DNA from: Macrostomum lignano | Lineage: Eukaryota | Reading direction: 5' to 3' | DNA length: 64,000 bases | Assembly (NCBI GenBank): GCA_002269645.1 | Contig: NIVC01001230.1 | Span: 124,001 to 188,000 of the forward strand | Shown here: positions 4,978 to 59,100 of the stretch, piece by piece | How the letters are laid out: each line of letters opens with the position of its first letter | Numbering within the stretch: position 1 is the stretch's first letter | The notes under the pieces: generated by a model | Told to the model about the DNA's origin: nothing | What the model saw: only the letters and a program-made list of their open reading frames with translations | Databases searched by the model: none | Program-made: the position numbers and the translations under genes

Positions 4978-13148
<8,171 letters not shown>

Positions 13149-33690: not shown

Positions 33691-33743
33691 TTCAAAACTC
33701 AACGTGTCGCTCAACGGATCAATCAATCAGTCAATCAAGCAGT

Positions 33744-38000: not shown

Positions 38001-39959
38001 CTAACTATATACGATTGAATCTGATTCGCTGCAGCGCTGCAGCTCCGCCACTGTGCCGCGAATGTGACGCACGCACGACTCCAAGCTCTTCGTTAGCGTG
38101 AGCAGCGACTGCGACATGGAGTCGATGATTTTCGCCTCCCGGCGCTCCCGCTGAGATGCGGTCGAATGGTCGATAAGAGGCTGCACAGATGGCTCTGCAA
38201 GACCGTCATTGCACTGATAGTCGCCTTCGCAGCAACAAGTTCTAAAGTTGCAGCTGCAATATTGAGTGTCGCAGGCACAGAACTCATCGCTGCAGTCGTT
38301 TTCTTCGAAGTTCGACTGGTTTCCGTCGAGTACCTGCGTGTTCTCAAGCTCAGACTCCTCGACATCTTCGTCTTCAATCTCTTCATTTCTGTCATTTTCG
38401 CTGCCAAGATCGCAGATTGCAGGGCATGTCTGAAAGCTGCACGCCTTGCTCTGCTGCCTCCGGCGACGTCGTCCACTACCCGTCCCTGGACAGGAGAAAG
38501 TTGCAGAGACAGCAGAGCCGCTGTACCGCAGTCTCGCCCTCTCCAGCGTCTGCAGAAGGTGGTCGAATCCGCCTCTTGCAATGGCCGTATGCAGTACGGC
38601 TGATTCGGTCTCTGCTGACTGAGTTGAGACCGCCGAAGCTGACGGTGAATCCAAGGGAGCTCGCCGACGCTGCCGCCATCTCTTGTCTCCACGTCGTTCT
38701 GGTGCTGAGTGCACATTTGAGTAGCCAACTGATGTGCAGCAGTCGCTGTCGCGAGTTCGATGTGATGAATGTGGATCAGATGCAGGCGGCCACTGAAGCT
38801 TCATTTGTTGACAGTCGGTAGTGCAGCCGCAGTCGCCAGTACTGGCTCCACTTGAGTAATGCAAAGCCGGACACAGGACCTCAGTGAGAGGTTCGCACTG
38901 TGGCTCGTTGCACTGTATGCGCCACTGCTCCATTCGCCAATCAGCTGACGCAGTCGGTTTCTCCCTGATGCAACGTGCAGTCATGGGGTGACATTGCAGC
39001 TTGTAAAATGCAGCCATCTGCCAGTCCGTCACAGTCTCGTCACAGTCGGAAAGCTCACAGTAGAAAAGTACTTTTTCTCGCCGAGAAACAGCTGGTTGTA
39101 GGTTAATTGACTCGCTTCTCGACTCTGCACAGCTTTAATGACAGCTCTGTGGTTGCTGGTACAGCAGCTCCAGCTGAAGGTTGAATTCCTCCTTGAATTC
39201 TACGGCCAAGACAGGTGATGGGTCGTCAGAGACGCGGGATGTAATTTGATGCTCGAGAGCATACCGAAAGCTGCGGTTGACGCGGCGTGTCATTGAACTG
39301 CACTTCTGCAGAATGTTTTGTTCACTCGATAGCCATTCGATGGCGTCTCCAGTCGGACAGTCAATGCAGCGAAGGTTGCAGGGACAGTCGAGATTCGACG
39401 GGACCAAGTACGACCTTGGCGATGGTAGCACCTGTGCCGGAGTTGAGCTACAAAACACGATGCACCAGTGCTTCCTCACTGTCTTGATTACTGGTCTGTC
39501 TGTCTCCACTGGCGTTGGCATAGGTGTGCAGGACTCGAGCAGCAAATTGTGAGATACTTCCCTAGCTGGAGTAACCGGCAGACTCCTGAGGAAAATACTC
39601 TCGAAGAAGCAGTGAGTCCTCCTGCTTGCAGTCGCTTTCTCGTTCAGTGACGATACAACTGAACTCTCTGAGCGAGGCCTTGAATCCACAGCTGACCGTG
39701 ACCTGACAACCGCCTGCTGCAAGTCCGGGGTCAGGCAAACTTCCGCAGTGATGACTCGAGTAAGCTTATAGGTCTTTCTGCTTCGATCTGGGGACCGTTT
39801 GCAGCTCAACGGGGTGTCAGCGTTGAAGGCGTCGACAGAGGAGCTTCCGTCATCCGGTGGAAGCCGGAAATGCGCATCGCCAGCGGCTGCACAGCGTCGA
39901 AAGTCGCACAGACTGGGCGATGATGCGGCTTCGCTGATGCCTTCGCTGTTGAAGTACAT
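38001..39959 (-). pseudogene. Intronless Ser/Cys-rich orphan ORF, copy 1, interrupted by one in-frame TAA at ~39135
   Basis: ORFs 39135-39959 and 38001-39032 are in the same frame and collinear with the intact ORF at 55581-57509. Confidence 0.7.
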
Positions 39960-40849
39960 CTTTTAAGCACTGCATAACTTCAGCTTTGCTGCGTAAATTT
40001 AACTTAATTTTAGAGCATTCTTGGATACGTGTCAAAGTTGAACCCTAAACTATATAAACAACCAGAATCCTCGCTCATCTGATGTTTTACAAGCTAGGGT
40101 CCCAGTTGTCACAGAAGTTTTTGCATTGTAGCCAGCATAGTCCTAATAAGTAATATTTTTTCTGAAGGAGAGCCTTAAAAAGAACAAAATTACAGTTCTA
40201 CGTACGTAGCTCATTCAGTGTTTAGATCAGGTGATCGTACAACGCTGTTTATATTTTCTGTCGAAGATTGTCGAAGATGTCTAAAGAAATTTAAGCTGGG
40301 GTAACGCCGGCGTGAACGCAATCACAGACCCTTTGCAGGCCTGAAACAGCAGTGGCAATGAGATAGCTCATGGGATATTTCCCAAGCCAAAAATAGGGCT
40401 GAAACTCAGTGAAGAAGCGAGCGAAGCTACGGGGTCGACTAAGATCTATCCAATCAGAAAGCAACGACTGATGTTGAGGATGAAATTAATAGGGACCACG
40501 CCATGCAAGAGCCAATCAGAAGTGGAGAGGGTTAAAGCGAGCCCAAAAATGATTTCGATTTAAGCGCAAACGGCGTAAAACGACAGCTGAGGGTAAGGAA
40601 ATGGCAGGAAAAGGAAATGCTGGAGATGAAAAACTCAACACAAGCAGCCGCCGAGAGGTTAGTCTACTGTAAGTATACTAAATCCATATACTAAAAAATG
40701 GTTTATCGGTATCTATCTATGTCGGTATGTGATCGTTTTTTTCTGAAAATAGAAAAAAGAAAACTGATATTATGGTTAAAGCTAACGGTTAATTTTTCAG
40801 CAGTCAAATATATCTCAGGTCTCACAAACAAAAATCTCCCTGGTTCTTC

Positions 40850-41320
40850 CCCTCCGCTCTCTCTCTCTCATGCAATCCTACCCTCCGCTCTCTCTCATGG
40901 AGTCTTACCCCCCGCTCTCCCTCATGGAGTCTTACCCTCCGCTCTCTCTCCTGGAGTCTTCCCCCCGCTCTCTCTCTCTCCTGGAGTCTTCTCCTCCGCT
41001 CTCTCTCCGGGAGTCTTCTCCTCCGCTCTCTCTCCGGGAGTCTTCTCCTCCGCTCTCTCTCATGGAGTCTTCTCCTCCGCTCTCTCTCTCCGGGAATCTT
41101 CTCCTCCGCTCTCTCTCCGGGAATCTTCTCCTCCGCTCTCTCTCATGGAATCTTCTCCTCCGCTCTCTCTCCGAGAATCTTCTCCTCCGCTCTCTCTCCG
41201 GGAGTCTTCTCCTCCGCTCTCTCTCCGGGAGTCTTCTCCTCCGCTCTCTCTCCGGGAGTCTTCTCCTCCGCTCTCTCTCCGGGAGTCTTCTCCTCCGCTC
41301 TCGCTCCTGGAGTCTCCTGG
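40850..41320. repeat. ~27 bp CT-rich minisatellite (CCGGGAGTCTTCTCCTCCGCTCTCTCT)
   Basis: About 17 copies. Confidence 0.93.
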
Positions 41321-41427
41321 AGCCTAATAAATGGAACTCACCCAAGTCATTTCATTGGCCGAGAGAGGCCATAGACAAGACGCCTCCATATATATTAAGT
41401 AACATTTCCACGAAAAAAAATTTCTCT

Positions 41428-41472
41428 CAGCCAATTAAAGCGCGCGGGAAAACGCGGAACTTGAATTTGAAT
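41428..41472 (+). promoter_or_regulatory. Candidate promoter cluster: CCAAT, E2F-like GCGCGGGAAA, CHR-like TTTGAA
   Basis: Motifs adjacent, ~200 bp upstream of ATG 41661; further CCAATCAGA at ~40450 and ~40513. Motif match only. Confidence 0.3.
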
Positions 41473-41660
41473 TTCCTACACTCTGATTATTTCATCTGTG
41501 TCACGGAATCCAGATCCTTTTGGTAGTTTTTGGTTTATGGCTTAACCCGCTTCTTCAACTACGAAGCTAAGTCTCAGAGTCAAGAGTCAGCTAAGAGTCT
41601 CAAGTGAAGCTAGCCTTAAAGCTTGTAAATAATTTTTGACAGCAAAGCCACCAAAAAGGC

Positions 41661-42456
41661 ATGGCAGCTGAGAGCCACTACCGGGACGTCAGCCACATGC
41701 GACTGCACCTGTCGAGCTCCCTGGCTAGCCTGGCCAATCGCGATGCCTCCTACCGGTCGGCTCTGCCGGGCATCGCCGAGATCCACGCCGACTGCTTGCA
41801 GCTGGCCGCCGATGAAATCGATTGCGAATCGCTGAGAGCGGCCTACTCAACCGTATCCATCCAGGCCGAGTCCGCCGATGCCGATCGAACTCGTCGATGG
41901 CGCCGGATGCTGGCGGACACCTCCCAGCTGTGGCTGCAGCGCAGCCGAGCAGTTGAACGGCTGGTCTGCCGGCTGGAGGCCGCCTTCCTGCGTCACGTGA
42001 TCAAGTTTGCCGACGAAGTCGACCGCGGCGACCCGGATGTTGGAACTGAGTGAGTCGCAACCGGAGCAAAGATCAATAAATTTTGCAAGAACTTGGCATT
42101 GGCGTTCATTTAAGTCCATTTATTCATGTTCTAGATGCTAATTGAACTCACTGTTAGTAATTTCACACGGATCTTTTCAACAGGGCTCGTCGACTCGGTC
42201 AGCTGGCGGAGACTCTGGGCGCACTGGCCGACAGGCTGGACTACTCACTGAGCTGCGAGTTTGAACTGTGCCAGAGCCGAATTTGCCAATTTCTGGCCTC
42301 TAAGGACGGGCAGCAGCACAGGACTGCAATTGGTGAGTTCGAAGCTGTATGCTGAATCGCTATATGGGTTATAAACACTGAATCACTATAAAACATTTTA
42401 CTGTCTTCTGCTCAAACTTACTAGCAGGCTCCATGCAGAGGCGAGAGCAACAACAA

Positions 42457-42487
<31 letters not shown>

Positions 42488-42726
42488 CACTGCCGCCCCA
42501 GGCGATGCCTGGTCAGTACTGGCCGGCCACTGCCAGCGGCCTGGAGATCTCTCAGCAACCTTGGGAGCAATTTTTACCCGCTGGTCGGTGGCTTTTATGG
42601 CTCGTTGTGGTGGCAATTCTGGTGGCAGCTGCACTCAAATTGTGGAGCATCTTTCGAACCGAATCCTGCGGCTGGACATTCGATTGGCAGGTGCTGAACG
42701 AGCGTGATGGTTACAGGCCCTACTGA
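41661..42726 (+). CDS. Three-exon helical protein (~278 aa) with poly-Q, C-terminal TM helix and short KASH-like tail
   Basis: Exons 41661-42049, 42184-42332 and 42428-42726, with GTGAGT donors and CAG acceptors that keep frame. TM segment WLLWLVVVAILVAAALKLW, then SIFRTESCGWTFDWQVLNERDGYRPY*. Confidence 0.8.
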
Positions 42727-43594
42727 GCAGTTTTTGGCTTGTTAGCGTGCTCAATCCAGCTGCCCTGTTTATTGTGCTGAATACACTTTGCTGATCTCTG
42801 CATGGCTAATAAGACTGCCGCTTAATTCATTCTTCATCTAATCAGTAACCAGTTGGCCGAAAAGTCCCTTGATTTTTTGTTTTGTACAAAAATCACTTCG
42901 TAAATATGCAACCCATACGTCTCCTTCTAAAAGTGTACATGTTTGCCTCGCGTTCTACCTTCAGGCATGCTCGTTTGCATCGCCAATTGACAGGCAAGCC
43001 ATTCTAGAGAATATTCGAATCATTCGTACTTGCTATATGGGGTGCTAGAGCACTCATGCAGAGTGACTTGCTATAATTTTCCATTCTGTAGCGTTCAACA
43101 ATGCCTGAGATTCGTCAATTGTCCCACTGACCACTGTTCATCGGAGCACTCTATAATTGTCCTTTTACATGCTGGACCATCCCGTGATGGCGATTTGTCA
43201 CGCTTTCGGATGATTTTCAAGATCTCGGTTGATTTTTCGTGTTACACGACTGTCACTGCCGCAGTTTGTGTTTGGCACTCGGTCCTTAAATACATGTATG
43301 TAGTGTAGACCCATGCTACACCTGTCGTAATCCCTGTACAATTGAGCATGTACGATTGGACCAACATGTAATGAAAAATAGTTGTACTGTTGCCAAATAT
43401 TAGATGCATTCCCATAATTGCACGCATAATGCGTTGCATTTGCATATTAGCTCGAAATCCTCCCGAGAAGTAAAAATCTCGCTATGCATATTTAATTATG
43501 ATTGACATTAAAATTTGTTGTTCTGTCGTTATCTTCCACATGGCAAAATTTTGACTTTTCTGTATTCTTGGAAGTCGGTCCACGTGCGCTGCGT

Positions 43595-46197
43595 CCCAGT
43601 GAAAAATGATTTATGGATTCCACGTGGGTTCCACGTGGCCATGTGGAATTTAAATGTTTCTTTAATTTTTGCAAATTAATGACTTAAAGATGACATAATG
43701 GTATGCAAAGTATTTTTTATGCATTATTTTTTTATTTTTACTGTCCTAATGTTGATGTGGATTTTTCAAGGAATTCAAGAGAAATAAGCATATATTGATT
43801 CAACATGGAATCCACTTCGATAAAAAACTGTGATACACCACATTCAGACGTTTTTATGAAATTACTATAATAAATTATTATATTTATATGCTTTTAAGTA
43901 AAAATTAATATCTTAAAGCTAAATTATAATCGGACAATAAGACACTGTTTGTTAAAATAGACAAAATAGAAGTGAACAATAAAAAACGTTTCGTGCTTTT
44001 TAAAATGAAATTAATTTTATTTTATATTCGTCAATGTCTTGGTTCAAGGCCTTGAAACATAAATTGCCTTGTTTATGGCTATTTAAGCACCTTAAAAAGA
44101 CCTAGCCTATAGGCAATAACTTATAAGTCCATGGCCTCCATGGGATTAGAAATTAGATAAATCAGTATTTTATCATAGATAGGCCTAATACTTTTGGTAA
44201 ATCCATGATAAATTTATTTAGGCCTATCCAATTTCTAGGAATCCCATGGCCATGTCCATAGATTGGCTACTCATTTTTTAACTTAAATAGTAGGCCTTTA
44301 GAAGTTCATAATTTCCTCTTAGTCCTAACTATCTATTTATATGTATGCTTATTAGGCCTATTTTAAGCTAGGCCTATAACTATCAATTTCAGCCTAAAAT
44401 TTAGGTCCTTCTATTTTATTTAAGGTTAGGACTAGCTTGACTTTGTGAATTGTGACTAGTCAATCTAGTTAATCTGTTAAAAATCTATTAATTTATGATT
44501 TTCTTCAAAAAAAGCCTGTTAGTGTTAGCATCTTTTGGACTTGTTGCATTTTTAAAAAACAATTTTTCTCTAATCGATTGCATACAAACAAGCAAGATTT
44601 TCATTTTTAGTATATGGATATTATTAATTATAATAAATAATTCTTTGCAATTACACTTGCAACTTGCTTTTGGCATAGCTAGCCTAGCAGACCCCTAAGG
44701 CCTAAGGTTGCTATTATAAATAAGTATTAAATTATTGTAAATTTGATCTGATTTAGGCCAAGACCAGAATTTAATAGCCATAGGGCATAGCTATTTAGGC
44801 TTAGGCCGCTTAGGCCTAATGTTTAATCATACTAGGCCAGCAAATATAAAAAAAACATGCATTGCTTTGCCTAAATACTTTATAGTCTAAAATCAATTTT
44901 TAAAATAAAAAAATAAATTTATAAAAACATTCATTAATTCTTTTTGTACTTATTATTTTATTGGTAATTTTATTGATTGACTTAGGTAGAGTTTTCTTTT
45001 TTGCTAGAGACAAGGTGCAAAATCATACCCTATGCTTACTTTCAGGGTTTTATAATTTTAAGGCTTAGAATGCAGTTTCTCTTTTTTCTTATATAAAGGC
45101 AGTGCAAATAAGGCTTCAACAAAAAATAGGTAATGAGATTGCACCTAAACTGTATCCAATTTTTAATTTCAATTTTCAAGGTGGGATTTTAAAATTTAGG
45201 GTGCTTATGCATACTTTGCGCATAAAAAATAAACCTAGGACTTAGGCCTAGTTAATTTTAAAATAAACTTAATTAAGTATTCATCCTTAAATTAGTTTTA
45301 TGAATTATTTCAATATAATCTATCAATCCTTATTCACAACAATTATTTTTCTATTTCATTTCAGCCTAACATTACATGGCCCATCCTCAAACTTGGATGT
45401 CACCTTGGTCTTGCTTTTGAAGAAGCATGCAAAGCTACTTGGAATTTGAATTTAATATCTAGAATGCTACCTTTTGTGAAGCAATGGTAAGTTTTAGTTA
45501 TAAACTGATTTTTTTCTGTCATCAAAATCTGTTATAAGATCAAAATCTATTACAATATTTGTCATCAATCTGTTATAAAATTCTGTAATTTAACCCCTTT
45601 CTTTTCTAAGGTTGCTCACCTGACCCGAAGAAGCAGCATTATGGAAATTGGCAGCAGCATGTTTCTGACTGTTCTAATTCTGGTTCATTATATTATTGTT
45701 AATTAATTAATGCTATTGACAATGTCAATTTCAAATTATATATTAAATCATATGCATAGCGCAACTCAAGATATCAATATCTACATCAGTGTGTTTATTC
45801 TTTGTGTGCCAGTGACTCACTACTGTACATAAATACACCTTACTTATTGAGACATCCTTTTTGAATATATTTTTGTGCAGAAATATTTTTGGCTATAGCT
45901 AGTGTTTTTATCTGTGTTTCAGTTTCTTTTATATGGTATTGAGATCTGGGGTTCGTATGAAATTTTGAGATCTGGTATTATTTTGAGATTTAGGATGCAA
46001 CAATTTATTATGGCAACCAGTATAATGGCTGCTTGCTCAATGACAATGTGGATTCTATGTGAAATACATAATTACTTCCATGTGGATCTTCCATGTGGAA
46101 TCCATATCTTGATTCCACATGGATGGACGGAGACAAATGCACATATGGATTTCATATGAAAAATCCACATGGAATCCATATCATTTTTTTCACTGGG
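43595..46197. mobile_element. Degenerate CMC/EnSpm-like DNA transposon (2.6 kb), non-autonomous
   Basis: TIRs CCCAGTGAAAAA..TGAT..ATGGATTCCA(C/T)GTGG at both ends, subterminal CCACGTGG-type repeats, 2-bp direct repeat GT on both flanks; AT-rich interior with no long ORF. Confidence 0.7.
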
Positions 46198-48439
46198 GTG
46201 CGTGCGGAGAGAAGGCCAACTGTATGTTGGTGTTAGCCTTATGGGCTCCAAGTCCTCAATGGTTAATTATTAAATTAATAATCGCCGATCTAGATTATAG
46301 CTAGAGATCCCGGTAGGGTTGCTCGCTTGACAACAATTAAGTAGAGGAAACTGAAAATAAACTTTTTAGTTTCTTAGACTTTTGCCAATGCATTTCGACC
46401 GCAATAGCTAGAGAGTAGGGCCTATGTTTAATAATTCAGTATTTGAGTCAGCTAGATCTAGTTTAAAATATATATGAATAGGCCTATGAACTGCTTTATT
46501 ATTTTTGATTTTATATGTAGAACTTGCTATTTTGTTATTTCCCATGCTGTCAATACAATCTTGACTTTAGTTAAACTTAAATTTATATTTTCTTTTAACA
46601 CGGTTTAAGGCTTTTTAAAAAACGTTTCATTGACATATTCAAGTGGATAGGCCTATTTCCTATTATATTATTAGGCCCTATCTATTGGTACTGACTGACC
46701 TTTGTCTAGGAGACTGGCCAGGTTTACAACATGTTTAATACTATATAAAATACATACAGTAGCATTCTTTAAGTTGGTTTAAACATTTAAATTATATATA
46801 CTGGTATAGCCTAGAAAATAGTCATAAAACTAGCAATTTGATAAGGCAAATAATTCTTATATAGTTTCAACCCTAGCCCTAGGCCTTAGGTCTAGGAAAG
46901 CATTAATATCTAGGCTTAAATTATGGGTTGGCTTGGCAACTCTACCCTATGGGTCCTATGTGGCCCACAAAGCCTCTTTTTCTAGTCCTTGGGTCTATTA
47001 AACTACAATAGTAATCTAGTCCACCTAAGGCTTATGTCTTATCTTATAGCTTCTTTCTCTTTTCTTTTTCCCCTCTTCTTTCCTCTCCCCTCTCCTCTCT
47101 TCTTCTCCCTTCTTCTTTTTTCCTTTCTTTTCTATTCTCCATTCTCCTCTTCTGGGCCCTTAGTCTTATAGTTAAAAAGTTAGCCAAACATTGGCTTAAA
47201 CTAAATGTTATAAAATCCTTTATTATAAAAAGCTTTTATTATTTAAGACCTTTAGTTCTTAGCTAAAAATATTTTTAGATAGCAACAATAATCTAATACC
47301 TTGATACCTATGGGACTTATTATTTATAAGCACATGAATGAATCTAGAATCTACTTTAATTGTTGGGCCTATGCTAAATGTATCCAAGCCACAATTTTAT
47401 CAATAGCCTTCTCTAGATAGAGCCTAAATTTCATGAAAAAAAACATTTCAAATAGCAAAAGCATAGGTATAAAACTTTTGGATTCACTTGGCTATTTCTA
47501 TTAGTATATATATATAGGTCACTATAGCCAAACTTTAAATACAAATCACTAATAGCAACATATGTAATAGGCCTATACAAGTCAATTCAGGCAACATTTA
47601 CATACAAGTAACTTGAAACATAAGTCACTATTGGAAAAAGCATGTTTATTGCTTGTTTTCAAAGCAAGAAAATCAGCTTGTTTACTTACTACAGACAAAC
47701 AGATTCGGCCTATTTGTAAGTTTTTGAAGCTTACTTATCATGATATAACTAATCTATAGTTCATAATACTACTCATAGGTACTATGAGTAGATAGAGCAA
47801 TATTTTTATTTTCTACATGGGAATTTTTTAGAGCCAATATTTTCAACATTCAGTCTTTTGAAAGACTTAACAATGAGAACATGCATGTTGGATGCCTCTT
47901 GTTCATAATGTTGCATATTGCAGTTCTGTGAATTCAACCAAGCAGTGCTGTCTGTGCATTCGATTGACATGTGTCTGTGCCGTGCTTTGCTCTGCTCATC
48001 ACTAGTTTTCTGCGCGATAGCATTTTAGCCGCTATTTGCACCTTAATGAATTCCCCCTGCTGTACGAAGGCTCGATCTAATAAGGCTCTGGCCACGACCG
48101 CTGGCCTCGCTGTGGTGGGTTTCCGTTCAAGCCTCTGAATACTCGAGGCTGGAACAGCATTAAAAGGCTCTGTAGTGCCCAGCCAGCTGCCCATATAATG
48201 GCCACGTGTGAGGCTGCTACGTAAACTCGCCAGCAATTAAGAAGCTCTGGTAGTTAGAAAAACATCTGTGTTTTCGGTTGGTTTGCCGCGTTCATTTAAT
48301 CAGGAACTGCGGGGCATGCACCATTGTAGAGGATGCTTGGATTAGAACTAGTAATTCAAGCTACATGTTCAGATTATTCTTGACTGCATCTAAAATGCAT
48401 CGTTTATAAATTTACTAATGTTCATTCAACAAGCTGACA

Positions 48440-48456
48440 CAGACAGACAGACAGCC

Positions 48457-48516
<60 letters not shown>

Positions 48517-48608
48517 AGAAAGACAGAGAGACAGACAAACAGACAGACAGACAGACACTAAGACACTAAGACACTAAGACAGACAGACAGACAGAAAGAG
48601 ACAGACAA

Positions 48609-48649
<41 letters not shown>

Positions 48650-48710
48650 GAGACAGACACTAAGACACTAAGACACTAATACACTAATACACCAAGACAG
48701 ACAGACACTA

Positions 48711-48743
<33 letters not shown>

Positions 48744-48745
48744 CA
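48440..48745. repeat. (GACA)n microsatellite with ACACTAAG variants
   Basis: Seen directly. Confidence 0.97.
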
Positions 48746-49909
48746 AAGAAGATAAGCAATCAAAGGCTGAAGCCTGTTTAGTTGGCAGAGTTCGCCTATC
48801 TCTGCTCTCATCTTGTCTAGTGCGCAGAAGTCTCCAGTCTCGTCGGCTCTTCGTTGGTTGCCAAGTGGCGCGTTCTCGTTTGAGAGGGCACTCGACAGAA
48901 TCTTGCGGCTCTTCTACATAGACGCTTCAAAGCGTGAGCCGCCTTGAATCTGATGATTTGAATGCGTCACGCCTCTGCCGAAGCCCCCGGTCATTAAGAA
49001 TTCTAGAGATCGTTGCGGGTGACAATTTGAATTGAAATTGAACGAGGGGGGGGCAGGTGAGCGACCGACTGACGGTCAAATTGAATTAGCGATCTCGCTA
49101 TTTCAGTTGAGTCCGGCTGGAAAAATAAAATGTTCCCATCCAGTGTCTCGCCGCTAGCACGAGGTTTTCAGAATTGCAAAGGCAAACGAAGACTTTCCTT
49201 GTTTTTTATTATCGTTTTTCAACTGTTTTTTCTCTCTTCTTTGTTGCAAAAGAATTTGAAACGGAGATGAATTTTTGGGTCTAAAAAGAGTCGCGGAAAT
49301 GGGATCGGGCTTCGCTAGTCTATTCACCGGGGCTGCTGGGGACACGCAACGGGGGAGAGGGAACAGCGGAGGGGCAGTAATGACCCTGGCGCGGTTACGT
49401 CACGCCCCGTCCGCCAGCGATAGAAAACTGGAGATTCTGTGGGCGCCTGGCTGCCTGTCTTTCTTTTTCTGCATTTAACTTTGTGTAGCCCTTTTCTAAG
49501 GGAGGGTTTTATTTAGTGGCATGCCTGAATTGTATTTTTCTCAGCTAAGAATTCTTTGATAATTCGTTAATTGCAGAGGTCAGTTAAGCTCTAACTGAAA
49601 ACATTTTGGCTTCTAAAAGAGCGAATTTCAATTCGTAAGCAGGCGTAGCAAGATTTCTAGTTAATTAACGTGGAGACTGAAATCTGAGCTTGCCTATCGA
49701 GATTCGATTACAATTACGTAATCACCAGGAGTTTTGCCTCTGCAGAATCCTCGAGTTCTTAGCCAGTTTTCAGTTGCCGCGGCAAAGCGCCCTGATTGAG
49801 TTTCTTCTACGACTAACAAAATTTGCCTCCAAAATTTTGGCTATTTGATTTCGAATGATGTCCTCCCCGCGAGAGCTGAGGGAACTTAACATGTATCTAG
49901 GGGTGGCAG

Positions 49910-52260
49910 ATGCAAGCTGGATCACCGGGAATTCCCAGGGTGACAAAGATGCAAGCTGGATCACCGGGGAATTCCCAGGGTAACAAAGATGCAAGCTGGA
50001 TCACCGGGAATTCCCAGGGTAACAAAGATGCAAGCTGGATCACCGGGGAATTCCCAAGGTGACAAAGATGCAAGCTGGATCATCTGGAATTCCCAAGGTG
50101 ACAAAGATGCAAGCTGGATCACCAGGAATTCCCAGGGTGACAAAGATGCAAGCTGGATCACCGGGGAATTCCCAGGGTGACAGAGATGCAAGCTGGATCA
50201 CCGGGAATTCCCAGGGTGACAAAGATGCAAGCTGGATCACCGGGGAATTCCCAGGGTGACAAAGATTTAAGCTGGATCACCGGGGAATTCCCCAAGGTGA
50301 CAGAGATGCAAGCTGGATCACCGGGGAATTCCCAGGGTGACAAAGATGCAAGCTGGATTACCGGGAATTCCCCAAGGTGACAAAGATGCAAGCTGGATCA
50401 CCGGGAATTCCCCAAGGTGACAGAGATGCAAGCTGGATCACCGGGAATTCCCCAAGGTGACAAAGATGCAAGCTGGATCACCGGGAATTCCCAGGGTGAC
50501 AAAGATGCAAGCTGGATCACCGGGAATTCCCAGGGTAACAAAGATGCAAGCTGGATCACCGGGGAATTCCCAAGGTGACAAAGATGCAAGCTGGATCATC
50601 TGGAATTCCCAGGGTGACAAAGATGCAAGCTGGATCACCGGGAATTCCCAGGGTGACAAAGATGCAAGCTGGATCACCGGGGAATTCCCAGGGTGACAGA
50701 GATGCAAGCTGGATCACCGGGAATTCCCAGGGTGACAGAGATGCAAGCTGGATCACCGGGGAATTCCCAGGGTGACAAAGATTTAAGCTGGATCACCGGG
50801 GAATTCCCCAAGGTGACAGAGATGCAAGCTGGATCACCGGGGAATTCCCAGGGTGACAAAGATGCAAGCTGGATTACCGGGAATTCCCCAAGGTGACAAA
50901 GATGCAAGCTGGATCACCGGGAATTCCCCAAGGTGACAGAGATGCAAGCTGGATCACCGGGAATTCCCCAAGGTGACAAAGATGCAAGCTGGATCACCGG
51001 GAATTCCCAGGGTGACAAAGATGCAAGCTGGATCACCGGGAATTCCCAGGGTGACAAAGATGCAAGCTGGATCACCGGGAATTCCCAGGGTGACAAAGAT
51101 GCAAGCTGGATCACCGGGAATTCCCAGGGTGACAGAGATGCAAGCTGGATCACCGGGAATTCCCAGGGTGACAAAGATGCAAGCTGGATCACCGGGGAAT
51201 TCCCAGGGTGACAAAGATGCAAGCTGGATCACCGGGAATTCCCAGGGTGACAGAGATGCAAGCTGGATCACCGGGGAATTCCCAGGGTGACAAAGATTTA
51301 AGCTGGATCACCGGGGAATTCCCCAAGGTGACAGAGATGCAAGCTGGATCACCGGGGAATTCCCAGGGTGACAAAGATGCAAGCTGGATCACCGGGGAAT
51401 TCCCAGGGTGACAAAGATGCAAGCTGGATCACCGGGAATTCCCAGGGTGACAAAGATGCAAGCTGGATCACCGGGGAATTCCCAAGGTGACAGAGATGCA
51501 AGCTGGATCACCGGGGAATTCCCAGGGTGACAAATATTTAAGCTGGATCACCGGGAATTCCCAGGGTGACAAAGATGCAAGCTGGATCACCGGGGAATTC
51601 CCAGGGTGACAAAGATGCAAGCTGGATCACCGGGGAATTCCCAGGGTGACAGAGATGCAAGCTGGATCACCGGGAATTCCCAGGGTGACAAAGATGCAAG
51701 CTGGATCACCGGGGAATTCCCAGGGTGACAAAGATGCAAGCTGGATCACCGGGGAATTCCCAGGGTGACAAAGATGCAAGCTGGATCACCGGGGAATTCC
51801 CCAAGGTGACAAAGATGCAAGCTGGATCACCGGGAATTCCCAGGGTGACAAAGATGCAAGCTGGATCACCGGGGAATTCCCAGGGTGACAAAGATGCAAG
51901 CTGGATCACCGGGGAATTCCCCAAGGTGACAAAGATGCAAGCTGGATCACCGGGGAATTCCCAGGGTGACAAAGATGCAAGCTGGATCACCGGGGAATTC
52001 CCAGGGTGACAAAGATGCAAGCTGGATCACCGGGAATTCCCAGGGTGACAAAGATGCAAGCTGGATCACCGGGGAATTCCCAGGGTGACAAAGATTTAAG
52101 CTGGATCACCGGGAATTCCCAGGGTGACAGAGATGCAAGCTGGATCACCGGGAATTCCCAAGGTGACAAAGATGCAAGCTGGATCACCGGGAATTCCCCA
52201 AGGTGACAGAGGTTTAAGCTGGATCATCTGGAATTCCCAAGGTGACAGAGGTGCCAGCTA
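49910..52260. repeat. 39-40 bp satellite (GGGAATTCCCAGGGTGACAAAGATGCAAGCTGGATCACC) with ~516 bp higher-order repeat
   Basis: About 59 units; identical ORF translations recur at 516/515 bp offsets (50158/50674/51189). Confidence 0.97.
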
Positions 52261-53182
52261 GATCAGTGTTGCGGTGTTGCATGAATAGGATTTTTGAATT
52301 AGGAAATGAGTAGCAACTCACTTTTTACCAAGCTCTTTTGCAATCTTCCAAGCTCTGAATATTTTCTCTAGAATTCCGCACAGTTCTGACGGTGATAAAA
52401 AAGTCTAGCTAGCTAGTTCGCAATTTCGCTCTCTATTCTTCCTTACTCAAGGATGTTTGAAAAAAATCACTCGGGATTCGCTACAGAGCTCCCTCCCATC
52501 TGGAATAAGCTCGCGTTTTCCTCTCACTGCGCTCTGCTCTCAGACTCTCATGGCGAGCGGTGTTGTGTGTGATTGAGGAGGCTTGCTTAGCCGCAAAATC
52601 GGAAGCTGAGTAATCCCTCCTCCTGATCTCGCCTCTTCCTCAGTTCCACCTCTCCCTCTCGCGTCTTTGAATTACAGAGCAGGCGGGAGGGGCGGCTGCT
52701 GCGGCCCGGGACCTCGGCAGTTCCCCCCGATCGACCCAATCAGTAGGCACTGTTCGTCACTCTGTCTGTCAGTCTCCGGTAGCCAAGCGAAGCCTTCGAG
52801 TCCTAAATGTGATTCCCCCTGACCCCAATCTTATCTATCGCTCGCTTGCCTCGCTCGCCAAAGTCGCAAAAGAGTAGAGGGGCAGAAATGAGCTCTAGCT
52901 GAGCAGCAGATGAAGATGTAGACAGGGGTTGTACAGGCAGTCTGGCTCTCCTCTCGCACACTCGCCCCAGAGGGCTAGTAAGGTGACGAATGAATCGAAC
53001 GAGAATAAGTTTTCTGCCTCAAGCCTTTCTGATTGGCTCTGCCGCCGATCCGTGTGGGCGCCAATCCCTGACGCACTGCCGGCCCAACCGTGGGGCTATT
53101 AAGTCATTCTCGGGCCCGCCCCTGTGTTCCAGCGGTTTGACTGTCGGCAACTTGCTGGCATGGCATGACACTCTGACGCACT

Positions 53183-56100
53183 ATGCTGCCGCTGCTGTTG
53201 CTGCTGCCGCTGCTACACTCGCCCCCTGGCGCTAGCGGCCAGGCCAGCAACTTCACCTTCCATGTTGAGGAGAACGGAGACCGGCCGGACCTGCTTGTTG
53301 GCTCTGTGAACTCCGGCGACTGTGGCGGCGGCGCCGGCGCCCAGGTGTACAACTCCTTCAGCATCCCGCGCGACCGCTTCAGCTTGGACTCGCGCACCGG
53401 CCAGATTCGAACTCTGGCAGCCCTGGACCGCGAGGCCCAGGCTTCCTACAGCTTCGACTTCATCTGCGGCAGCCAGGTCGGTCACGTGACCGTGCTAATC
53501 GACGACAAAAACGACTGCGCCCCAACCTTCTCCAACTCCAGCCTGTGGCTGCGGCTGCTGGAGACGGTCGCTGTCCCCACCGAGCTGTCCTTGGGCTTCG
53601 TGGAGGACGCTGACTCTGCGGAGAACGGCCTCGACCGAGTGGAGATCACCGCTGGTAACGCCGAGCACCGGTTCCGCCTCCGGCTCCGCCAGCAGCCCGC
53701 CAGGCCGGCCCGCTCCGACTTGCTGCTGGAGCTGCTCGCCCCGCTGGACTTCGAGTCGGCAGCTGAGCACCGCCTGCGGCTGGTTGCCACGGATAAGCGC
53801 GGCCTGACCGGCTCGGCCGGTGTCACTGTGATCGTGGAGAACGCCAACGATGAGCGGCCGGTGTTTGAGCAGACTCGCTACAGCCTGGACGTGCTGGAGA
53901 ACGCCACTGTTGGCTCCCGGCTGCTCCAGGTGCGGGCCACCGATCGGGACGCCGGGGTGTTCGGCATTGTGAGCTACAGCATCGAGCACGGGGTGTCCGA
54001 GTCTAGCCGCCTGTTCTCAGTGGAGCCGGACACCGGGATTGTCCGCCTGGCCGGCCAGTTAGACTTCGAGACCAAGCGCGCCCACTCGCTGGTCCTGCTG
54101 GCGTCGGATGGCGCCAATTCCAACAGCGCCAACCTGCTGGTGCGCGTCTTGGACGTCAACGACCGGCCGCCATCGATTTCGGCCACCAGACTGGGCAGCG
54201 CCGACCTGACCCAGGTGACACCAGTGGGTCAACCGGTGTTCCGAGTGCAGGCGGCCGACCCGGACAGGCCCGGAGAACCAGTGAAATTGACGCTGGCCTG
54301 CCAGCTGGCGGGTGGCGCCGCCCAGTGTCCGGAGTACTTCAGGCTGGCGCCTCTGGATGTCAACCTCTATGTGCTGCAGGTGAGAACCGCAATGGGCCTG
54401 ACGTCTCGCTCAATGAACTGACATCTTATCAAATGAGCTGACACCTCAATACCTCGATCAATGATCTGACACCTCGATCAATGATCTGACACCTCGATCA
54501 ATGATCTGACACCTCGATCAGTAATCTGACACCTCGATCAATGATCTGACACCTCGATCAATGATCTGACACCTTGATAAATGATCTGACACCCCGATCA
54601 ATGATCTGACACCTCGATTAATGATCTGACGCCTCCATCAATGATCTGACACCTCGATCAATGATCTGACACCCCGATCAATGATCTGACACCTCGATTA
54701 ATGATCTGACACCTCGATTAATGATCTGGCACATCGATCAAAGATTCTTGTCATTGATTGTGTTGTTGCTCAATAGATTTATTTCAATTTTCTCGGGGCA
54801 ATTGCTTAACACATACTCAACCACACAAAAAGTATCTGTGCACCTATCAAACAAAGGTATACCAGCTGCTGTATAAAAAGTTTATAACCGGTCAAACTGT
54901 TTTGATGCAGCATAGGAACCCTCCCCGAAAGTCATTGCCACTCGGAAATCAGCACTAGTCATACAACGCTGGCGCTCTTGTCTGCCAAATTTTATGTATT
55001 TTATTGGGATTCGCGTCCTTGCAAAGCATTTTAAGGCGAAGTCAAGTGCGTGCTTAAACTAAACAACTCTCGATTCCAGGTAGAGCAAGTCAAGTCAAGG
55101 GGGGGGAGCATCACAAACCCAAAAAATCGCAACTCCAAAAACAAAAATAGCATTGCCCATCATAAACCCGAGATATCAAAACTCCGAAAGTTCTAGCAAT
55201 GTCCAAAAATATTTTGGTTTTCGGAGTTATTATATTTCGCCTTTGTGATATTTCGGGTTTATGATGGGCGTTGCTAACGCTTTCGGAGTTATGATATTTC
55301 GGGTTTGGGATATTTCGAGTTAATGATGGGAATTGCTTTCAGGGTTGTGATTTTTCGGGTTTATGATGGCGACCCAGTCAAGAAAATCGGACTGAATTCG
55401 GCCTCATTAAAAAGCTTAAGAGGGCAGTTCAGCTTTGAATATCTCATCGGCAGCTCTTTTATTTATAAAGGTAGAGAAAATGACTATACCGTACTGCAAC
55501 AAACAATATGTAAAGCTCATGTAAGTGGACTTATTGGTAAATAAATTTGTAGCAGTGGGTCTAATATCTATAATGCGGAATCAGAGTCGCTGCAGCTCCG
55601 CCACTGTGCCGCGAATGTGACGCACGCACGACTCCAAGCTCTTCGTTAGCGTGAGCAGCGACTGCGACATGGAGTCGATGATTTTCGCCTCCCGGCGCTC
55701 CCGCTGAGATGCGGTCGAATGGTCGATAAGAGGCTGCACAGACGGCTCTGCGAGACCGTCATTGCACTGATAGTCGCCTTCGCAGCAACAAGTTCTAAAG
55801 TTGCAGCTGCAATATTGAGTGTCGCAGGCACAAAACTCATCGCTGCAGTCGTTGTCTTCGAAGTTCGACTGGTTTCCGTCGAGTACCTGCGTGTTCTCAA
55901 GCTCAGACTCCTCGACATCTTCGTCTTCAATCTCTAATTCATTTCTGTCATTTTCGAGGCCAAGATCGCAGGTTGCAGGGCATGTCTGAAAGCTGCACGC
56001 CTTGCTCTGCTGCCTCCGGCGACGTCGTCCACTACCCGTCCCTGGACAGGAGAAAGTTGCAGAGACAGCAGAGCCGCTGTACCGCAGTCTCGCCCTCTCC

Positions 56101-59100
56101 AGCGTCTGCAGAAGGTGGTCGAATCCGCCTCTTGCAATGGCCGTATGCAGTACGGCTGATTCGGTCTCTGCTGACTGAGTTGAGACCGCCGAAGCTGACG
56201 GTGAATCCAAGGGAGCTCGCCGACGCTGCCGCCATCTCTTGTCTACACGTCGTTCTGGTGCTGAGTGCACATTTGAGTAGCTAACTGATGTGCAGCAGTC
56301 GCTGTCGCGAGTTCGATGTGATGAATGTGGATCAGGTGCAGGCGGCCACTGAGGCTTCATCTGCTGACAGTCGGTAGTGCAGCCGCAGTCGCCAGTACTG
56401 GCTCCACTTGAGTAATGCAAAGCCGGATGCAGGACCTCAGTAAGAGGTGCGCACTGTGGCTCGTTGCACTGTATGCGCCATTGCTCCATTCGCCAATCCG
56501 ATGACGCAGTCGGTTTCTCCCTGATGCAACGTGCAGTCATGGGGTGACATTTCAGCTTGTAAAATGCAGCCATCTGCCAGTCCGTCACAGTCTCGTCACA
56601 GTCGGAAAGCTCACAGTAGAAAAGTACTTTTTCTCGCCGAGAAACAGCCGGTTGTAGGTAAATTGACTCGCTTGTAGACTCTGCACAGCTTTGCCAGCTC
56701 TGTGGTTGCTGGTACAGCAGCTCCAGCTGAAGGTTGAATTCCTCCTTGAATTCTACGGCCAAGACAGGTGATGGGTCGTCAGAGACGCGGGTTATTTGTT
56801 GCTGGAGAGCATACCGAAAGCTGCGGTTGACGCGGCGTGTCATTGAACTGCACTTCTGCAGAATGTTTTGTTCACTCGATGGCCAATCGATGGCGTCACC
56901 AGTATGACAGTCAATGCAGTGATGCTTGCAGGGACAGTCGAGATTCGACGGGACCAAGTACGACCTTGGCGATGGTAGCACCTGTGCCGGAGTTGAGCTA
57001 CAAAACACGATGCACCAATGCTTCCTCACTGTCTTGATTACTGGTCTGTCTGTCTCCACTGGCGTTGGCATAGGTGTGCAGGACTCGAGCAGCAAATTGT
57101 GAGATACTTCCCTAGCTGGAGTAACCGGCAGACTCCTGAGGAAGATACTCTCGAAGAAGCAGTGAGTCCTCCTGCTTGCAGTCGCTTTCTCGTTCAGTGA
57201 CGATACAACTGAACTCTCTGAGCGAGGCCTTGAATCCACAGCTGACCGTGACCTGACAACCGCCTGCTGCAAGTCCGGGGTCAGGCAAACTTCCGCAGTG
57301 CTGAATCGAGTAAGCTTATAGGTCTTTCTGCTTCGATCTGGGGACCGTTTGCAGCTCAACGGGGTGTCAGCGTTGAAGGCGTCGACAGAGGAGCTTCCGT
57401 CATCCGGTGGAAGCCGAAAATGCGCATCGCCAGCGGCTGCACAGCGTCGAAAGTCGCACAGACTGGGCGATGATGCGGCTTCGCTGATGCCTTCGCTAGT
57501 CAAGTCCATTTCAGATTTTGCACGGAAAAAATTGTGTGAAATTTGTTTGGCTGTTATCAATAGGTTGCAAGTTCTAGTTTCGCAATTTTTGCCCTAGACG
57601 AAATGTAACTCTAGTGCTCATTCGACAAGTTAAGACAAAATCTACAAGTAGTTGTCTCTGCTAAGAAAAGCATCTGCTCTTCTAGGAAACCACTGAAAAG
57701 GCTGAAATATATTGACTCCCTATGTGATTTTAAGCTGATCTGAGTTCAATAAGTCCATACAGTTCATACTAAGGGGACAGATCATCTCTCGTAGTGGCCT
57801 GAGTCCCAGGAGGTGCGCTATGGAGTGCGGATGCTTACGGAGACACAGCACAAGCAACTTTTGCCATCCTCATCAACAAGCAAAGTACACTCATCTATGA
57901 AGAGAGATTAGCCCTCAGATTTGGGTCGCAAGACAAGCCGGGGCTGCAATCATTTTCCAGAAACAATCCTTAGCTACTCGTACTTAAGCACGGGAGCTTA
58001 GACGCGTCGCAGAGCAAGGTCTGACTTTAATCCTTCAGCATTTGACCACTCAATGAGTCATCAAACAGTATCAATGTGTTTGGCGCATCAGTCAATGATC
58101 TGAATTCTCCTCTCACTATCCTGACGCCCCTCAGGTGGCCTCGCGCCTGTCGCCCGGCCAGTTCACCCTCTCGCTCACGGCCACGGACTCCGCTGCGCCG
58201 CCGCTGTCGGCCAGCCTGCTGCTCAACCTGACCGTCCAGCTGCGCAACGAGCGCGCCCCGGTGTTCGCGCGGCCCGCCTACCAAGCCGCCGTCACCGCCG
58301 CATCGACCAGCGACGGGACCGGCGCCAGGCGTCTCTTGCAGGTGTCGGCTGTCGACCCGGATGGCGACCCGGTGACCTACGCCATCCTGAGCGGCGGCGG
58401 TGGCGCACTGGAGATCGACTCTGCCACCGGTTGGGTGTCGCTGGCCGACGGCGCCGGTGGCAGCTGGCTGCTGTGCGGCAGCCTCTCAGTACTGCTCGGC
58501 GCTACCGACTGCGGCAGGCCGCCGCTGACTGGGAACGCCACTCTGACAGTCACTGTCAGCAGCTCGGCCGCCTTCCCGCCCCGCTTCCACCGCCCGGTGT
58601 TCACCGCTGCCGTCTCCCTCGCCTCGCTCACCGACGGCGCCTGCGTCGCTCGGGTATCGGCCTTCGACCCAGACTGCGGCTCCGTGCTGAACTTTGACTT
58701 CGCCGTCAACCCTACAGCCAGCTGGTACGGTCGCGAGTTCGAATCCGCTTTTCGGCTGGAGCCGCGCACCGGCCAGCTGTGCGTCCTGAACGGCACGGCA
58801 GCGGGCCGGCTGATGGCGCGGGCTGGCGGCCGCCTGGACCTGTCGGTGCGAGTCACGGATCCGTCAGGCATGCAGAGCTTCGCCTTGCTGATCCTGCGGC
58901 TGCCTAGCAACGGCCTGGCAACCGAAAGCGCCTCCGCTGGCCATGGATTTTTTCCTATTGACAAGTTAGTTTGGGTAGTTAGTTTTTTTCAGATTCAATT
59001 GCGTTTCCGGATCTTTGGGATTAAAATATGAGGTTCTATGAGCTTAAAATTTTAATCAGTGTGGGATTCGAGTCGGTGTGGGATTTGAGTCAGTTTGGGA

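What the first reader, a model, noticed from the sequence alone, without database searches (positions are those of the whole stretch)
38001..57509. Dispersed duplicate of a 1.9-kb intronless orphan ORF, with homology ending at the start and stop codons
38001-39959 and 55581-57509 (both minus) are roughly 95% identical by eye. Similarity starts at the aligned ATG (MYFNSEGISE vs MDLTSEGISE) and ends around the stop. The flanks are unrelated, and I see no poly(A), TSD or TIR. Copy 2 lies antisense in a cadherin intron. The protein has Cys clusters (CPCKHHCIDC, CELSDC, CACDTQYCSCNFRTCCC), an acidic tract and a terminal helix, and matches nothing I recognise. Options: a retroposing young gene family, CDS-limited gene conversion, or an unclassified mobile element or viral-type cargo gene.
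Basis: partly seen in the sequence, partly recalled or inferred. Interest (0 to 1): 0.7.

Follow-up and report, generated by a model that had tools for sequence, protein, structure and literature searches.

The report
Orphan flatworm gene pair, CDS-limited homology
Two copies of a species-restricted, intronless gene of the flatworm Macrostomum lignano lie 17.5 kb apart and resemble each other only from start codon to stop codon, most likely because gene conversion homogenised the coding part of an older gene pair. It is not a virus or a jumping gene, so it is a modest curiosity.

Summary
Window 38035-39947 and 55588-57497 (both minus) are 97.4% identical over 1916 nt. Similarity starts at the ATG and stops within about 3 nt of the stop codon, and nothing is alignable in ±6 kb of flank. 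The window is Macrostomum lignano contig NIVC01001230.1. Copy 2 (642 aa) is intact and lies antisense in an intron of a dachsous-like cadherin. Copy 1 carries one premature stop in this haplotype but is intact in another subgenome copy. Both copies sit at the same two positions in the other assembled haplotypes, so this is a local, same-strand pair, not a dispersed family. The protein has no relative among 5.8 billion clustered or 1.84 billion representative proteins, and no Pfam or PDB match. AlphaFold gives no fold (pLDDT 27). There is no poly(A), spliced-leader remnant, TSD, TIR, LTR or transposon domain. Differences between copy 1 and copy 2 are packed into short islands, including both CDS ends (p<2e-4). 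Later changes are spread evenly and look nearly neutral. I favour an older pair whose coding region was homogenised by interlocus gene conversion about when the subgenomes split (confidence about 0.5). A one-off CDS-sized copy is not excluded. Interest is modest.

The parts
55581..57509 (-). Copy 2: intact intronless ORF, 642 aa from the ATG, stop included. In GenBank it is a 5'-partial hypothetical protein (P0001, 654 aa), of the same type as Mlig012479.g3.
   Evidence: ORF list; exact match to P0001 on NIVC01001230.1; no Pfam or PDB hit; only itself in 1.84e9 representatives.
38001..39959 (-). Copy 1: the same gene, interrupted in this haplotype by one premature in-frame stop. It has a copy-1-specific C-terminal tail that reads into non-homologous flank. 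The counterpart on NIVC01001231.1 is intact (651 aa, Mlig011834.g2).
38035..39947 (-). Homology block in copy 1 (BLAST HSP). The MAFFT alignment extends it to the ATG at 39959 and to about 38031.
55588..57497 (-). Homology block in copy 2 (BLAST HSP). It extends to the ATG at 57509 and to about 3 nt past the stop.
53183..54421 (+). Cadherin exon (ORF bounds) upstream of the host intron. The gene is dachsous-like (protocadherin-16/23-like).
   Evidence: Pfam Cadherin 1.1e-34; best named hits are protocadherin-16/23.
58135..59031 (+). Cadherin exon (ORF bounds) downstream of the host intron. Copy 2 lies antisense between this exon and the previous one.
   Evidence: Pfam Cadherin 7.2e-12.
55323..60500 (.). 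A 5.2-kb tract that contains copy 2 and is almost identical (3 mismatches) between this contig and NIVC01000952.1. Sequence on both sides is 1-10% diverged. I read it as a recent homogenisation between haplotypes.

Best explanation
This is a two-member family of a Macrostomum-restricted, intronless protein-coding gene. The product is about 72 kDa, acidic, Cys-rich and largely disordered, and it evolves fast. The two members lie 17.5 kb apart in direct orientation. One is intergenic, upstream of Fcf1, and the other is antisense in a cadherin intron. I infer that the pair is older than its 97% identity suggests. The flanks, if they were ever homologous, have diverged beyond recognition. The coding region was homogenised by interlocus (non-allelic) gene conversion at about the time the three M. 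lignano subgenomes separated. On this reading a break in one copy was repaired from the other, and heteroduplex could form only where the two were still alike, that is inside the CDS. Short unconverted or patch-repaired islands were left behind, including at both CDS ends. Since then copy 1 has drifted almost neutrally in each subgenome and is disabled in this haplotype, while copy 2 has stayed intact. Shown here: the boundaries, the synteny, the orphan status, the clustering of differences, near-neutral drift with the ORF preserved, and the absence of mobile-element hallmarks. Inferred: the old age of the pair, conversion as the cause, and any function of the protein. My guess at function is an intracellular, possibly nuclear, metal-binding protein, perhaps germline-related. 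That rests only on the Cys/His motifs, the Arg runs, and the excess of Macrostomum-specific genes among germline genes reported in PMC5816591.
For: 1. Homology is confined to ATG-to-stop. The flanks show no similarity above shuffles within ±6 kb. The flanks of the orthologous copies in the other haplotypes still align at 97-98% right up to the gene. Flank decay since a recent duplication therefore cannot explain the boundaries. 2. The 26 substitutions that separate all copy-1 from all copy-2 sequences are strongly clustered. The median nearest-neighbour distance is 2.5 nt, and 20 of 26 lie in dense patches (p<2e-4). There is a 573-nt stretch with none (p about 0.001-0.005). Each copy-1 lineage's own changes are close to uniform. 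3. The islands include the first 12 nt after the ATG and the last ~20 nt, which is the frayed-edge pattern expected at the limits of conversion tracts. 4. Five of the six synonymous fixed differences lie within 20 nt of a nonsynonymous one. That argues for a recombinational or mutational origin of the islands rather than positive selection. 5. The copies are close, on the same strand, and present at the same two sites on NIVC01000952.1. The single-copy loci also match (L002 for copy 1, L004 for copy 2). 6. The region does undergo homogenisation: a 5.2-kb near-identical tract between haplotypes surrounds copy 2. 7. The ORF is under frame-preserving selection. No substitution among 72-98 creates a stop (3.3-4.6 expected, P 0.03-0.01), and all three internal indels are multiples of 3. 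This is needed if two old copies both kept a 640-codon ORF.
Against: The clock fits poorly. Outside the islands, copy 2 differs from the inferred ancestor of the three copy-1 sequences at only about 4 columns in about 1750 nt. Each copy-1 lineage has 25-37 changes over the same depth. For synonymous sites, 1-3 are seen against about 8.5 expected (P 0.002-0.03). If the islands are counted as ordinary substitutions, the branch has a normal length (6 S + 19 N), which is what a simple duplication at the subgenome split predicts. dN/dS of 0.56-0.9 and flat GC3 (0.58 vs 0.78-0.84 in neighbouring genes) show weak constraint, and that makes long survival of two old copies less comfortable. No outgroup genome was reachable, so neither the age of the pair nor the polarity of the islands was tested. 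No conversion event after the subgenome split is visible.
Confidence: 0.5

Rival explanations
1. A single recent copy of a CDS-sized segment was made at about the time of the subgenome split by a non-canonical route. One such route is capture of a truncated cDNA or RNA-templated repair tract at a break in the cadherin intron, with error-prone synthesis producing the mutation clusters. No later conversion is needed.
For: Copy-1/copy-2 divergence (2.1-3.1%; dS 0.03-0.04) equals the divergence among subgenome copies of copy 1 and the genome-wide 2.2% (PMC10733133). The branch separating the two copy types has a normal length (6 S + 19 N, against 8-11 S and 13-22 N per copy-1 lineage). Both copies lack introns. 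There is no flank homology. Clusters at both termini could be junction-associated errors.
Against: There is no poly(A) tract, no spliced-leader sequence (0 matches with up to 3 mismatches in the window; SL sequence taken from PMC8629364) and no TSD. The boundaries coincide with start and stop, not with transcript ends. The annotated 5'-partial models P0001 and P0004 show the copy-2 transcript running at least 36 nt upstream of the ATG into sequence unrelated to copy 1. Internal islands far from the junctions are not explained. I know of no mechanism that copies exactly an ORF.
Confidence: 0.22
2. This was an ordinary DNA-level segmental duplication of a larger piece. Its flanks were later deleted or replaced by the very fast indel and minisatellite turnover of the M. 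lignano genome, leaving only the selected ORF.
For: PMC10733133 reports that indels affect about 36% of aligned paralogue length since the genome duplication. The window is full of minisatellite arrays and carries a haplotype-specific retrotransposon insertion.
Against: Over the same time span, the flanks of each copy remain collinear and 97-98% identical among haplotypes, directly adjacent to the ORF on both sides. Trimming would have had to stop within about 3 nt of both start and stop. No residual patches of homology remain in ±6 kb.
Confidence: 0.1
3. The ORF is the cargo or the gene of an unclassified mobile element or an integrated virus, inserted independently at two sites.
For: The homology unit is sharply bounded and the flanks are unrelated. 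The protein is an orphan with atypical codon composition for this genome (GC3 0.58).
Against: Only two positions are known, and both are syntenic in the other haplotypes. The 90% cluster holds only the five M. lignano proteins from these loci, and there are no diverged relatives in 1.84e9 representatives. There are no TIRs, LTRs, TSDs or hairpins at the ends, no transposase, RT, integrase or capsid domain, and no relative in IMG/VR viral contigs. The unit has no non-coding termini at all, which no known element class shows.
Confidence: 0.04
4. The pattern is an assembly or polishing artefact of a polyploid PacBio assembly: cross-mapped reads made two diverged paralogues look alike.
For: PMC10733133 notes that 93% of read pairs map to multiple loci and that the assembly carries copy-number errors. 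The GenBank model PAA74360.1 is a copy-2/copy-1 chimera.
Against: The same two-copy arrangement, the same boundaries and the same fixed differences appear on independently assembled contigs. The copy-1 versions keep 10-25 private variants each, so polishing did not homogenise them.
Confidence: 0.03

Closest known systems
Concerted evolution by interlocus gene conversion limited to coding regions. From my own knowledge, the classic cases are the duplicated Amy and Hsp70 genes of Drosophila, the globin duplicates of primates and the tuf genes of enterobacteria.
   Same: The paralogues lie close together. Identity is high inside the CDS and drops abruptly at or near start and stop, with unrelated flanks. 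The divergence pattern is patchy and mosaic.
   Different: In those cases the genes are old, conserved and under strong purifying selection, and conversion is shown by comparison across species. Here the gene is an orphan with dN/dS of 0.6-0.9, no outgroup was available, and no conversion event after the subgenome split can be seen.
Processed retrogenes (LINE-mediated retrocopies)
   Same: The copy is intronless, lies at a new site inside another gene's intron in antisense, and its flanks are unrelated to the source.
   Different: There is no poly(A) tail, no TSD, no UTR or spliced-leader sequence, and the source copy is also intronless. Homology ends at the codons, not at the transcript ends.
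Macrostomum-specific (taxonomically restricted) genes. They make up 35-45% of M. lignano genes and about half of germline-enriched genes (PMC5816591).
   Same: There is no homologue outside the species or genus. The gene is annotated only as a hypothetical protein, evolves fast and is predicted to be disordered.
   Different: A 642-aa intronless ORF is long for a young gene. Expression site and function are unknown; the gene IDs did not appear in the supplementary tables that could be searched.

Membership tests
Processed retrocopy / retrogene | 3' poly(A) tract directly after the copied transcript | tested here: not met
   Neither copy is followed by an A-rich tract. At about 3% divergence a tail would still be visible.
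Processed retrocopy / retrogene | Target-site duplication flanking the insert | tested here: not met
   The repeat finder reports only weak two-copy matches (74-83%) that are not positioned at the block ends.
Processed retrocopy / retrogene | Homology covers the mature mRNA (UTRs, and here the spliced leader) | tested here: not met
   Homology starts at the ATG and ends at the stop. The 35-nt SL from PMC8629364 is absent from the window. The annotated copy-2 transcript extends at least 36 nt upstream into non-homologous DNA.
Processed retrocopy / retrogene | Parent has introns and the copy lacks them | tested here: not met
   Both copies are single uninterrupted blocks that align end to end. 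No third, intron-containing member exists among the annotated proteins.
DNA transposon, Helitron or MITE with cargo | Terminal inverted repeats or hairpin ends plus a TSD | tested here: not met
   No inverted repeat pair brackets either copy.
Any transposable element family | Multiple copies at non-syntenic sites | tested here: inconclusive
   Only two sites are known, and both are syntenic across haplotypes. The annotated proteome has no further members. The whole M. lignano genome could not be searched at nucleotide level with these tools.
Any transposable element or virus | Recognisable transposase, RT, integrase, capsid or other viral domain | tested here: not met
   Pfam gives no family at E<=1. 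PDB sequences give only one chance-level hit at E=0.2. IMG/VR gives none.
Plain segmental duplication | Homology extends into the non-coding flanks | tested here: not met
   Searches show no flank similarity above shuffled or reversed controls within ±6 kb.
Interlocus gene conversion / concerted evolution | Paralogues on the same chromosome, close together | tested here: met
   The copies are 17.5 kb apart on the same strand (13.6 kb on NIVC01000952.1).
Interlocus gene conversion / concerted evolution | Mosaic divergence: long identical tracts interrupted by short, highly diverged patches | tested here: met
   The fixed differences are clustered (p<2e-4), with a 573-nt tract free of them.
Interlocus gene conversion / concerted evolution | Paralogues within a genome more alike than orthologues between species (phylogenetic incongruence) | not testable with these tools
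   No other Macrostomum genome or proteome was reachable. Within the species, copy-1/copy-2 distance (41-60 mismatches) is about equal to the distance among subgenome copies of copy 1 (31-59), which is compatible but not decisive.
Any known protein family | Significant sequence or fold match | tested here: not met
   The AlphaFold2 model has mean pLDDT 27.2 and pTM 0.18, too poor for a fold search.

The most novel reading that the evidence does not exclude
The ORF was copied as an ORF. On this reading, a process in this trans-splicing, neopolyploid flatworm generates new gene copies whose ends coincide with start and stop codons. It might be RNA-templated repair or capture of a transcript fragment without leader or tail, with error-prone synthesis leaving mutation clusters. 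That would be a route of gene duplication not described for animals.
Probability: 0.15. Interest if true: 0.6.

Novelty: new member of a known kind. Interest (0 to 1): 0.3.

Why it matters
If the favoured reading is right, this is one more example of coding-region-limited concerted evolution. The gene involved is a fast-evolving orphan in a neopolyploid genome. The case is useful mainly as a caution: 97% identity does not date a duplication, and transcript-based annotation of such pairs produces chimeric gene models. If the minority reading is right and the ORF was copied precisely, it would point to an unusual duplication mechanism worth a genome-wide survey. For flatworm biology, it flags an intact 642-aa Macrostomum-specific gene (copy 2) with a decaying sister copy. 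That makes it a small natural experiment on the fate of duplicates after genome triplication.

Tried and rejected
1. Homology searches for the protein found only the M. lignano cluster itself. These were Pfam, PDB sequences, 5.8e9 clustered proteins, exhaustive HMMER against 1.84e9 representatives and IMG/VR.
2. Structure prediction with the shallow four-sequence alignment gave pLDDT 27. I did not run a fold search, because matches to such a model are meaningless.
3. I tried to find an outgroup or an empty site through the neighbouring cadherin exon. The search returned only distant protocadherins at 26-36% identity and no Macrostomum relatives, so no outgroup test was possible.
4. I could not reach copy 2 of the third haplotype. 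The fetched locus L002 stops about 8 kb short, and no exact protein was available to anchor a new fetch.
5. The gene IDs Mlig011834 and Mlig012479 gave no hit in full texts or in the supplements of four M. lignano papers, and several tables were truncated when stored. No expression information was obtained.
6. The 35-nt spliced leader quoted in PMC8629364 is absent from the window. Rfam gave no family.
7. No internal repeats were found in the protein.
8. I considered positive selection as the cause of the islands and set it aside, because synonymous changes co-cluster with nonsynonymous ones.
9. No recent conversion after the subgenome split was seen: copy 2 shares none of the private variants of any single copy-1 lineage beyond three scattered sites.


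Full report
OBSERVATION. A BLASTN self-comparison of the window gives a single dispersed repeat pair, 38035-39947 vs 55588-57497. It is 97.39% identical over 1916 nt, with 41 mismatches and 5 gaps. All other self-hits are minisatellite arrays or the two LTRs of a retrotransposon. In the MAFFT alignment of the two regions with 150-200 nt of flank, similarity begins at the aligned ATG. Ten of the first 14 nt match, and identity is above 97% from there on. Similarity ends about 3 nt after the TGA of copy 2. Smith-Waterman scores for 60, 200 and 600 nt of flank on either side are no better than shuffles. A sensitive blastn (word 7, +1/-1) over 6 kb on each side finds nothing beyond what a reversed-sequence control gives, apart from minisatellite noise. 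No inverted or direct repeats bracket either copy, and there is no A-rich tail. Copy 2 (55581-57509, minus) is an intact 642-codon ORF. Copy 1 (38001-39959, minus) carries one premature in-frame stop in this window, and every copy-1 version has a different short C-terminal tail that reads into non-homologous DNA. Copy 2 lies antisense between two + strand exons with Cadherin domains, at 53183-54421 and 58135-59031.

WHERE IT COMES FROM. The copy-2 protein is identical to a GenBank protein on contig NIVC01001230.1 of Macrostomum lignano assembly GCA_002269645.1. The window corresponds to record positions 124001-188000. Its 90% cluster has five members, all M. lignano hypothetical proteins: BOX15_Mlig011834g2, BOX15_Mlig011834g3, BOX15_Mlig012479g3 and the two encoded by this window. 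Three further loci were fetched. L002 (NIVC01001231.1) carries an intact 651-aa copy 1. L003 (NIVC01000952.1) carries both copies 13.6 kb apart. L004 (NIVC01003765.1) carries copy 2 and is 99.7% identical to the window over 17.9 kb. All are collinear with the window, with the order cadherin, copy 2, a 278-aa gene, copy 1, Fcf1. This matches the published finding that about 85% of this genome is present as three paralogous subgenome copies, which differ by 2.2% overall and by 1.1% in CDS (PMC10733133). So the family consists of two positions, each present in the different haplotypes. The gene names, two transcript families each numbered up to g3, agree with this. That last point is an inference from naming only.

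WHAT THE PROTEIN IS. There is no Pfam family at E<=1. The PDB search gave only a chance-level hit. No relative was found among 5.8e9 clustered proteins or in an exhaustive HMMER scan of 1.84e9 representatives, and there is none in IMG/VR. AlphaFold2 with the four available sequences gives mean pLDDT 27 and pTM 0.18, with only low-confidence helices at residues 448-476 and 602-641. I did not run a fold search on such a model. The protein is about 72 kDa with pI 5.8. It is hydrophilic, rich in Ser, Arg and Cys (39 Cys in C-x-C, C-x2-4-C and CCC motifs), and has Arg runs and an acidic tract. It has no internal repeats and no N-terminal hydrophobic segment. GC content is flat across codon positions (GC3 0.58), whereas the neighbouring cadherin and Fcf1 genes have GC3 of 0.78-0.84. 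Orphan genes are common in this species: 35-45% of genes are Macrostomum-specific, and about half of germline-enriched genes are (PMC5816591). Expression data for these IDs could not be found.

IS IT A GENE UNDER SELECTION? Pairwise dN/dS is 0.56-0.90. The changes private to single lineages, almost all in copy 1, fall 22:24:26 on codon positions 1, 2 and 3. They split 23 synonymous to 48 nonsynonymous, only slightly more synonymous than neutral expectation (p=0.046). Copy-1 CDS divergence among haplotypes (1.6-3%) equals that of its own non-coding flanks. Amino-acid sequence is therefore barely constrained. The reading frame, however, is preserved. None of the 72-98 substitutions creates a stop, against 3.3-4.6 expected (P 0.03-0.01). 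All three internal indels are multiples of three. Five of the six sequences keep the full ORF. This pattern fits a disordered, fast-evolving protein whose presence matters more than its exact sequence.

HISTORY OF THE PAIR. An alignment of six sequences gives the tree ((three nearly identical copy-2 sequences), (L003 copy 1, (window copy 1, L002 copy 1))). Copy-1/copy-2 distance (41-60 mismatches; dS 0.03-0.04) is about the same as the distance among the copy-1 versions of different haplotypes (31-59 mismatches). The bulk of the two sequences therefore last shared an ancestor at about the time the subgenomes separated. Over that same time, the flanks of each copy remain 97-98% identical among haplotypes, right up to the ORF. 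Co-duplicated flanks would thus still be obvious. Either only the CDS was copied, or the CDS of an older pair was homogenised.

THE DISCRIMINATING PATTERN. The 26 substitutions that separate all copy-1 from all copy-2 sequences are not spread out. Twenty of them lie in dense patches: the first 12 nt after the ATG, the last ~20 nt (together with an 8-nt indel), and internal patches of 13-74 nt with roughly 10-20% local divergence. The median nearest-neighbour distance is 2.5 nt, and one 573-nt stretch has none. The significance is p<2e-4 for clustering and about 0.001-0.005 for the gap, against both uniform placement and relabelling of the observed variable sites. The lineage-private changes are close to uniform (p 0.03-0.44 per lineage). 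Five of the six synonymous fixed differences lie within 20 nt of a nonsynonymous one (my estimate of the chance probability is about 0.001). The islands therefore do not look like products of positive selection. They look like blocks with a different history. Long identical tracts, short diverged islands and frayed ends next to unrelated flanks are what interlocus gene conversion between older paralogues leaves behind. The two copies are well placed for it, being 17.5 kb apart in direct orientation. The locus also shows a separate, very recent 5.2-kb homogenised tract between haplotypes around copy 2, with 3 mismatches between 55323 and 60500 and 1-10% divergence outside it.

WHAT DOES NOT FIT. 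Outside the islands, copy 2 differs from the inferred ancestor of the copy-1 sequences at only about 4 columns in about 1750 nt. Each copy-1 lineage has 25-37 changes over the same depth. One to three synonymous changes are seen where about 8.5 are expected (P 0.002-0.03, depending on how the islands are drawn). If the islands are counted as ordinary changes, the branch has a normal length (6 S + 19 N). That is what a one-off duplication at the subgenome split predicts. Each model therefore has one misfit. Conversion needs copy 2 to have been almost frozen afterwards. A simple copy has three problems: it needs a mechanism that cuts at start and stop, it leaves the clustering unexplained, and it lacks every retrocopy hallmark. 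There is no poly(A), no TSD and no spliced leader (0 matches to the 35-nt SL quoted in PMC8629364). The annotated copy-2 transcript also extends at least 36 nt upstream of the ATG into sequence unrelated to copy 1. I weigh the boundary and clustering evidence more heavily. My confidences are: conversion of an older pair about 0.5, a one-off CDS-sized copy about 0.2, a larger duplication trimmed by indel turnover about 0.1, and a mobile or viral unit or an assembly artefact a few percent each.

COMPARISON WITH KNOWN THINGS. As a process, this resembles coding-region-limited concerted evolution, well known from my own knowledge for conserved duplicated genes such as Amy, Hsp70, the globins and tuf. 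It differs in that the gene is an orphan under weak constraint, and in that the cross-species test that defines concerted evolution could not be run. The pair fails every tested defining feature of a processed retrocopy, of a terminal-repeat transposon, of an LTR element or virus gene, and of a plain segmental duplication (see the membership table). It belongs to no known protein family.

VERDICT. The orphan status is solid within the limits of the databases. The most exciting readings (a retroposing family, a new mobile element, viral cargo) are not supported. What remains is a local pair of a Macrostomum-specific gene with homology that is strikingly exact to the CDS. Gene conversion probably explains it, with one unexplained clock anomaly. 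Novelty: a new member of a known kind. Interest: about 0.3. An outgroup Macrostomum genome and transcript-end data would settle the mechanism.

Noticed in passing
window 27396-31728 (+): A Ty3/gypsy-type LTR retrotransposon of about 4.3 kb. Its ~185-nt LTRs (27396-27575 and 31542-31728) are 96% identical. The domain order is gag, zinc knuckle, aspartic protease, RT, RNase H, integrase. The coding region is read in three different frames, so there are two frame changes, one of which may be the normal gag/pol shift. It is inserted in a 20-nt minisatellite and is absent from the same site in L002 and L003, so it is a haplotype-specific insertion.
   Followed up: partly
window 55323-60500: A 5.2-kb tract with only 3 mismatches between this contig and NIVC01000952.1. 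It is bounded on both sides by 1-10% divergence and includes copy 2 and cadherin exons. It looks like a recent gene-conversion or recombination tract between subgenome copies.
   Followed up: partly
L003 10001-25569 (GenBank PAA74360.1 = P0004): This annotated gene model is a chimera. It starts in copy 2 and ends in copy 1 across a 13.6-kb 'intron', switching in mid-ORF without a splice junction. It is an annotation artefact of mapping near-identical transcripts.
   Followed up: partly
window 18113-23731; also 5345-6806, 13160-14890, 49908-52265, 59056-59916 and about 20 more: The density of minisatellites is exceptional. Units are 15-40 nt, and one 20-nt unit is repeated 281 times over 5.6 kb. 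Array lengths differ among haplotypes.
   Followed up: no
window 8996-13148 (+): Exons of a MARK/Par-1-like kinase, with protein kinase, UBA and KA1 domains, in a GC-rich stretch.
   Followed up: no
window 33731-34333 (-): An intronless Fcf1 (rRNA-processing PIN-domain) gene about 3.4 kb downstream of copy 1. It is conserved in position in L002 and L003.
   Followed up: no
window 55148-55369: A cluster of short inverted and direct repeats of a ~16-nt unit, 210-430 nt downstream of copy 2's stop. It coincides with the edge of the near-identical haplotype tract. Its significance is unknown.
   Followed up: no
copy 2 residues 192-202 vs copy 1: The densest island of copy-1/copy-2 differences falls in a C-x-C-x3-C-x2-C motif. 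Copy 2 has three additional His there that all copy-1 versions lack. This may be a metal-binding site that differs between the paralogues.
   Followed up: no
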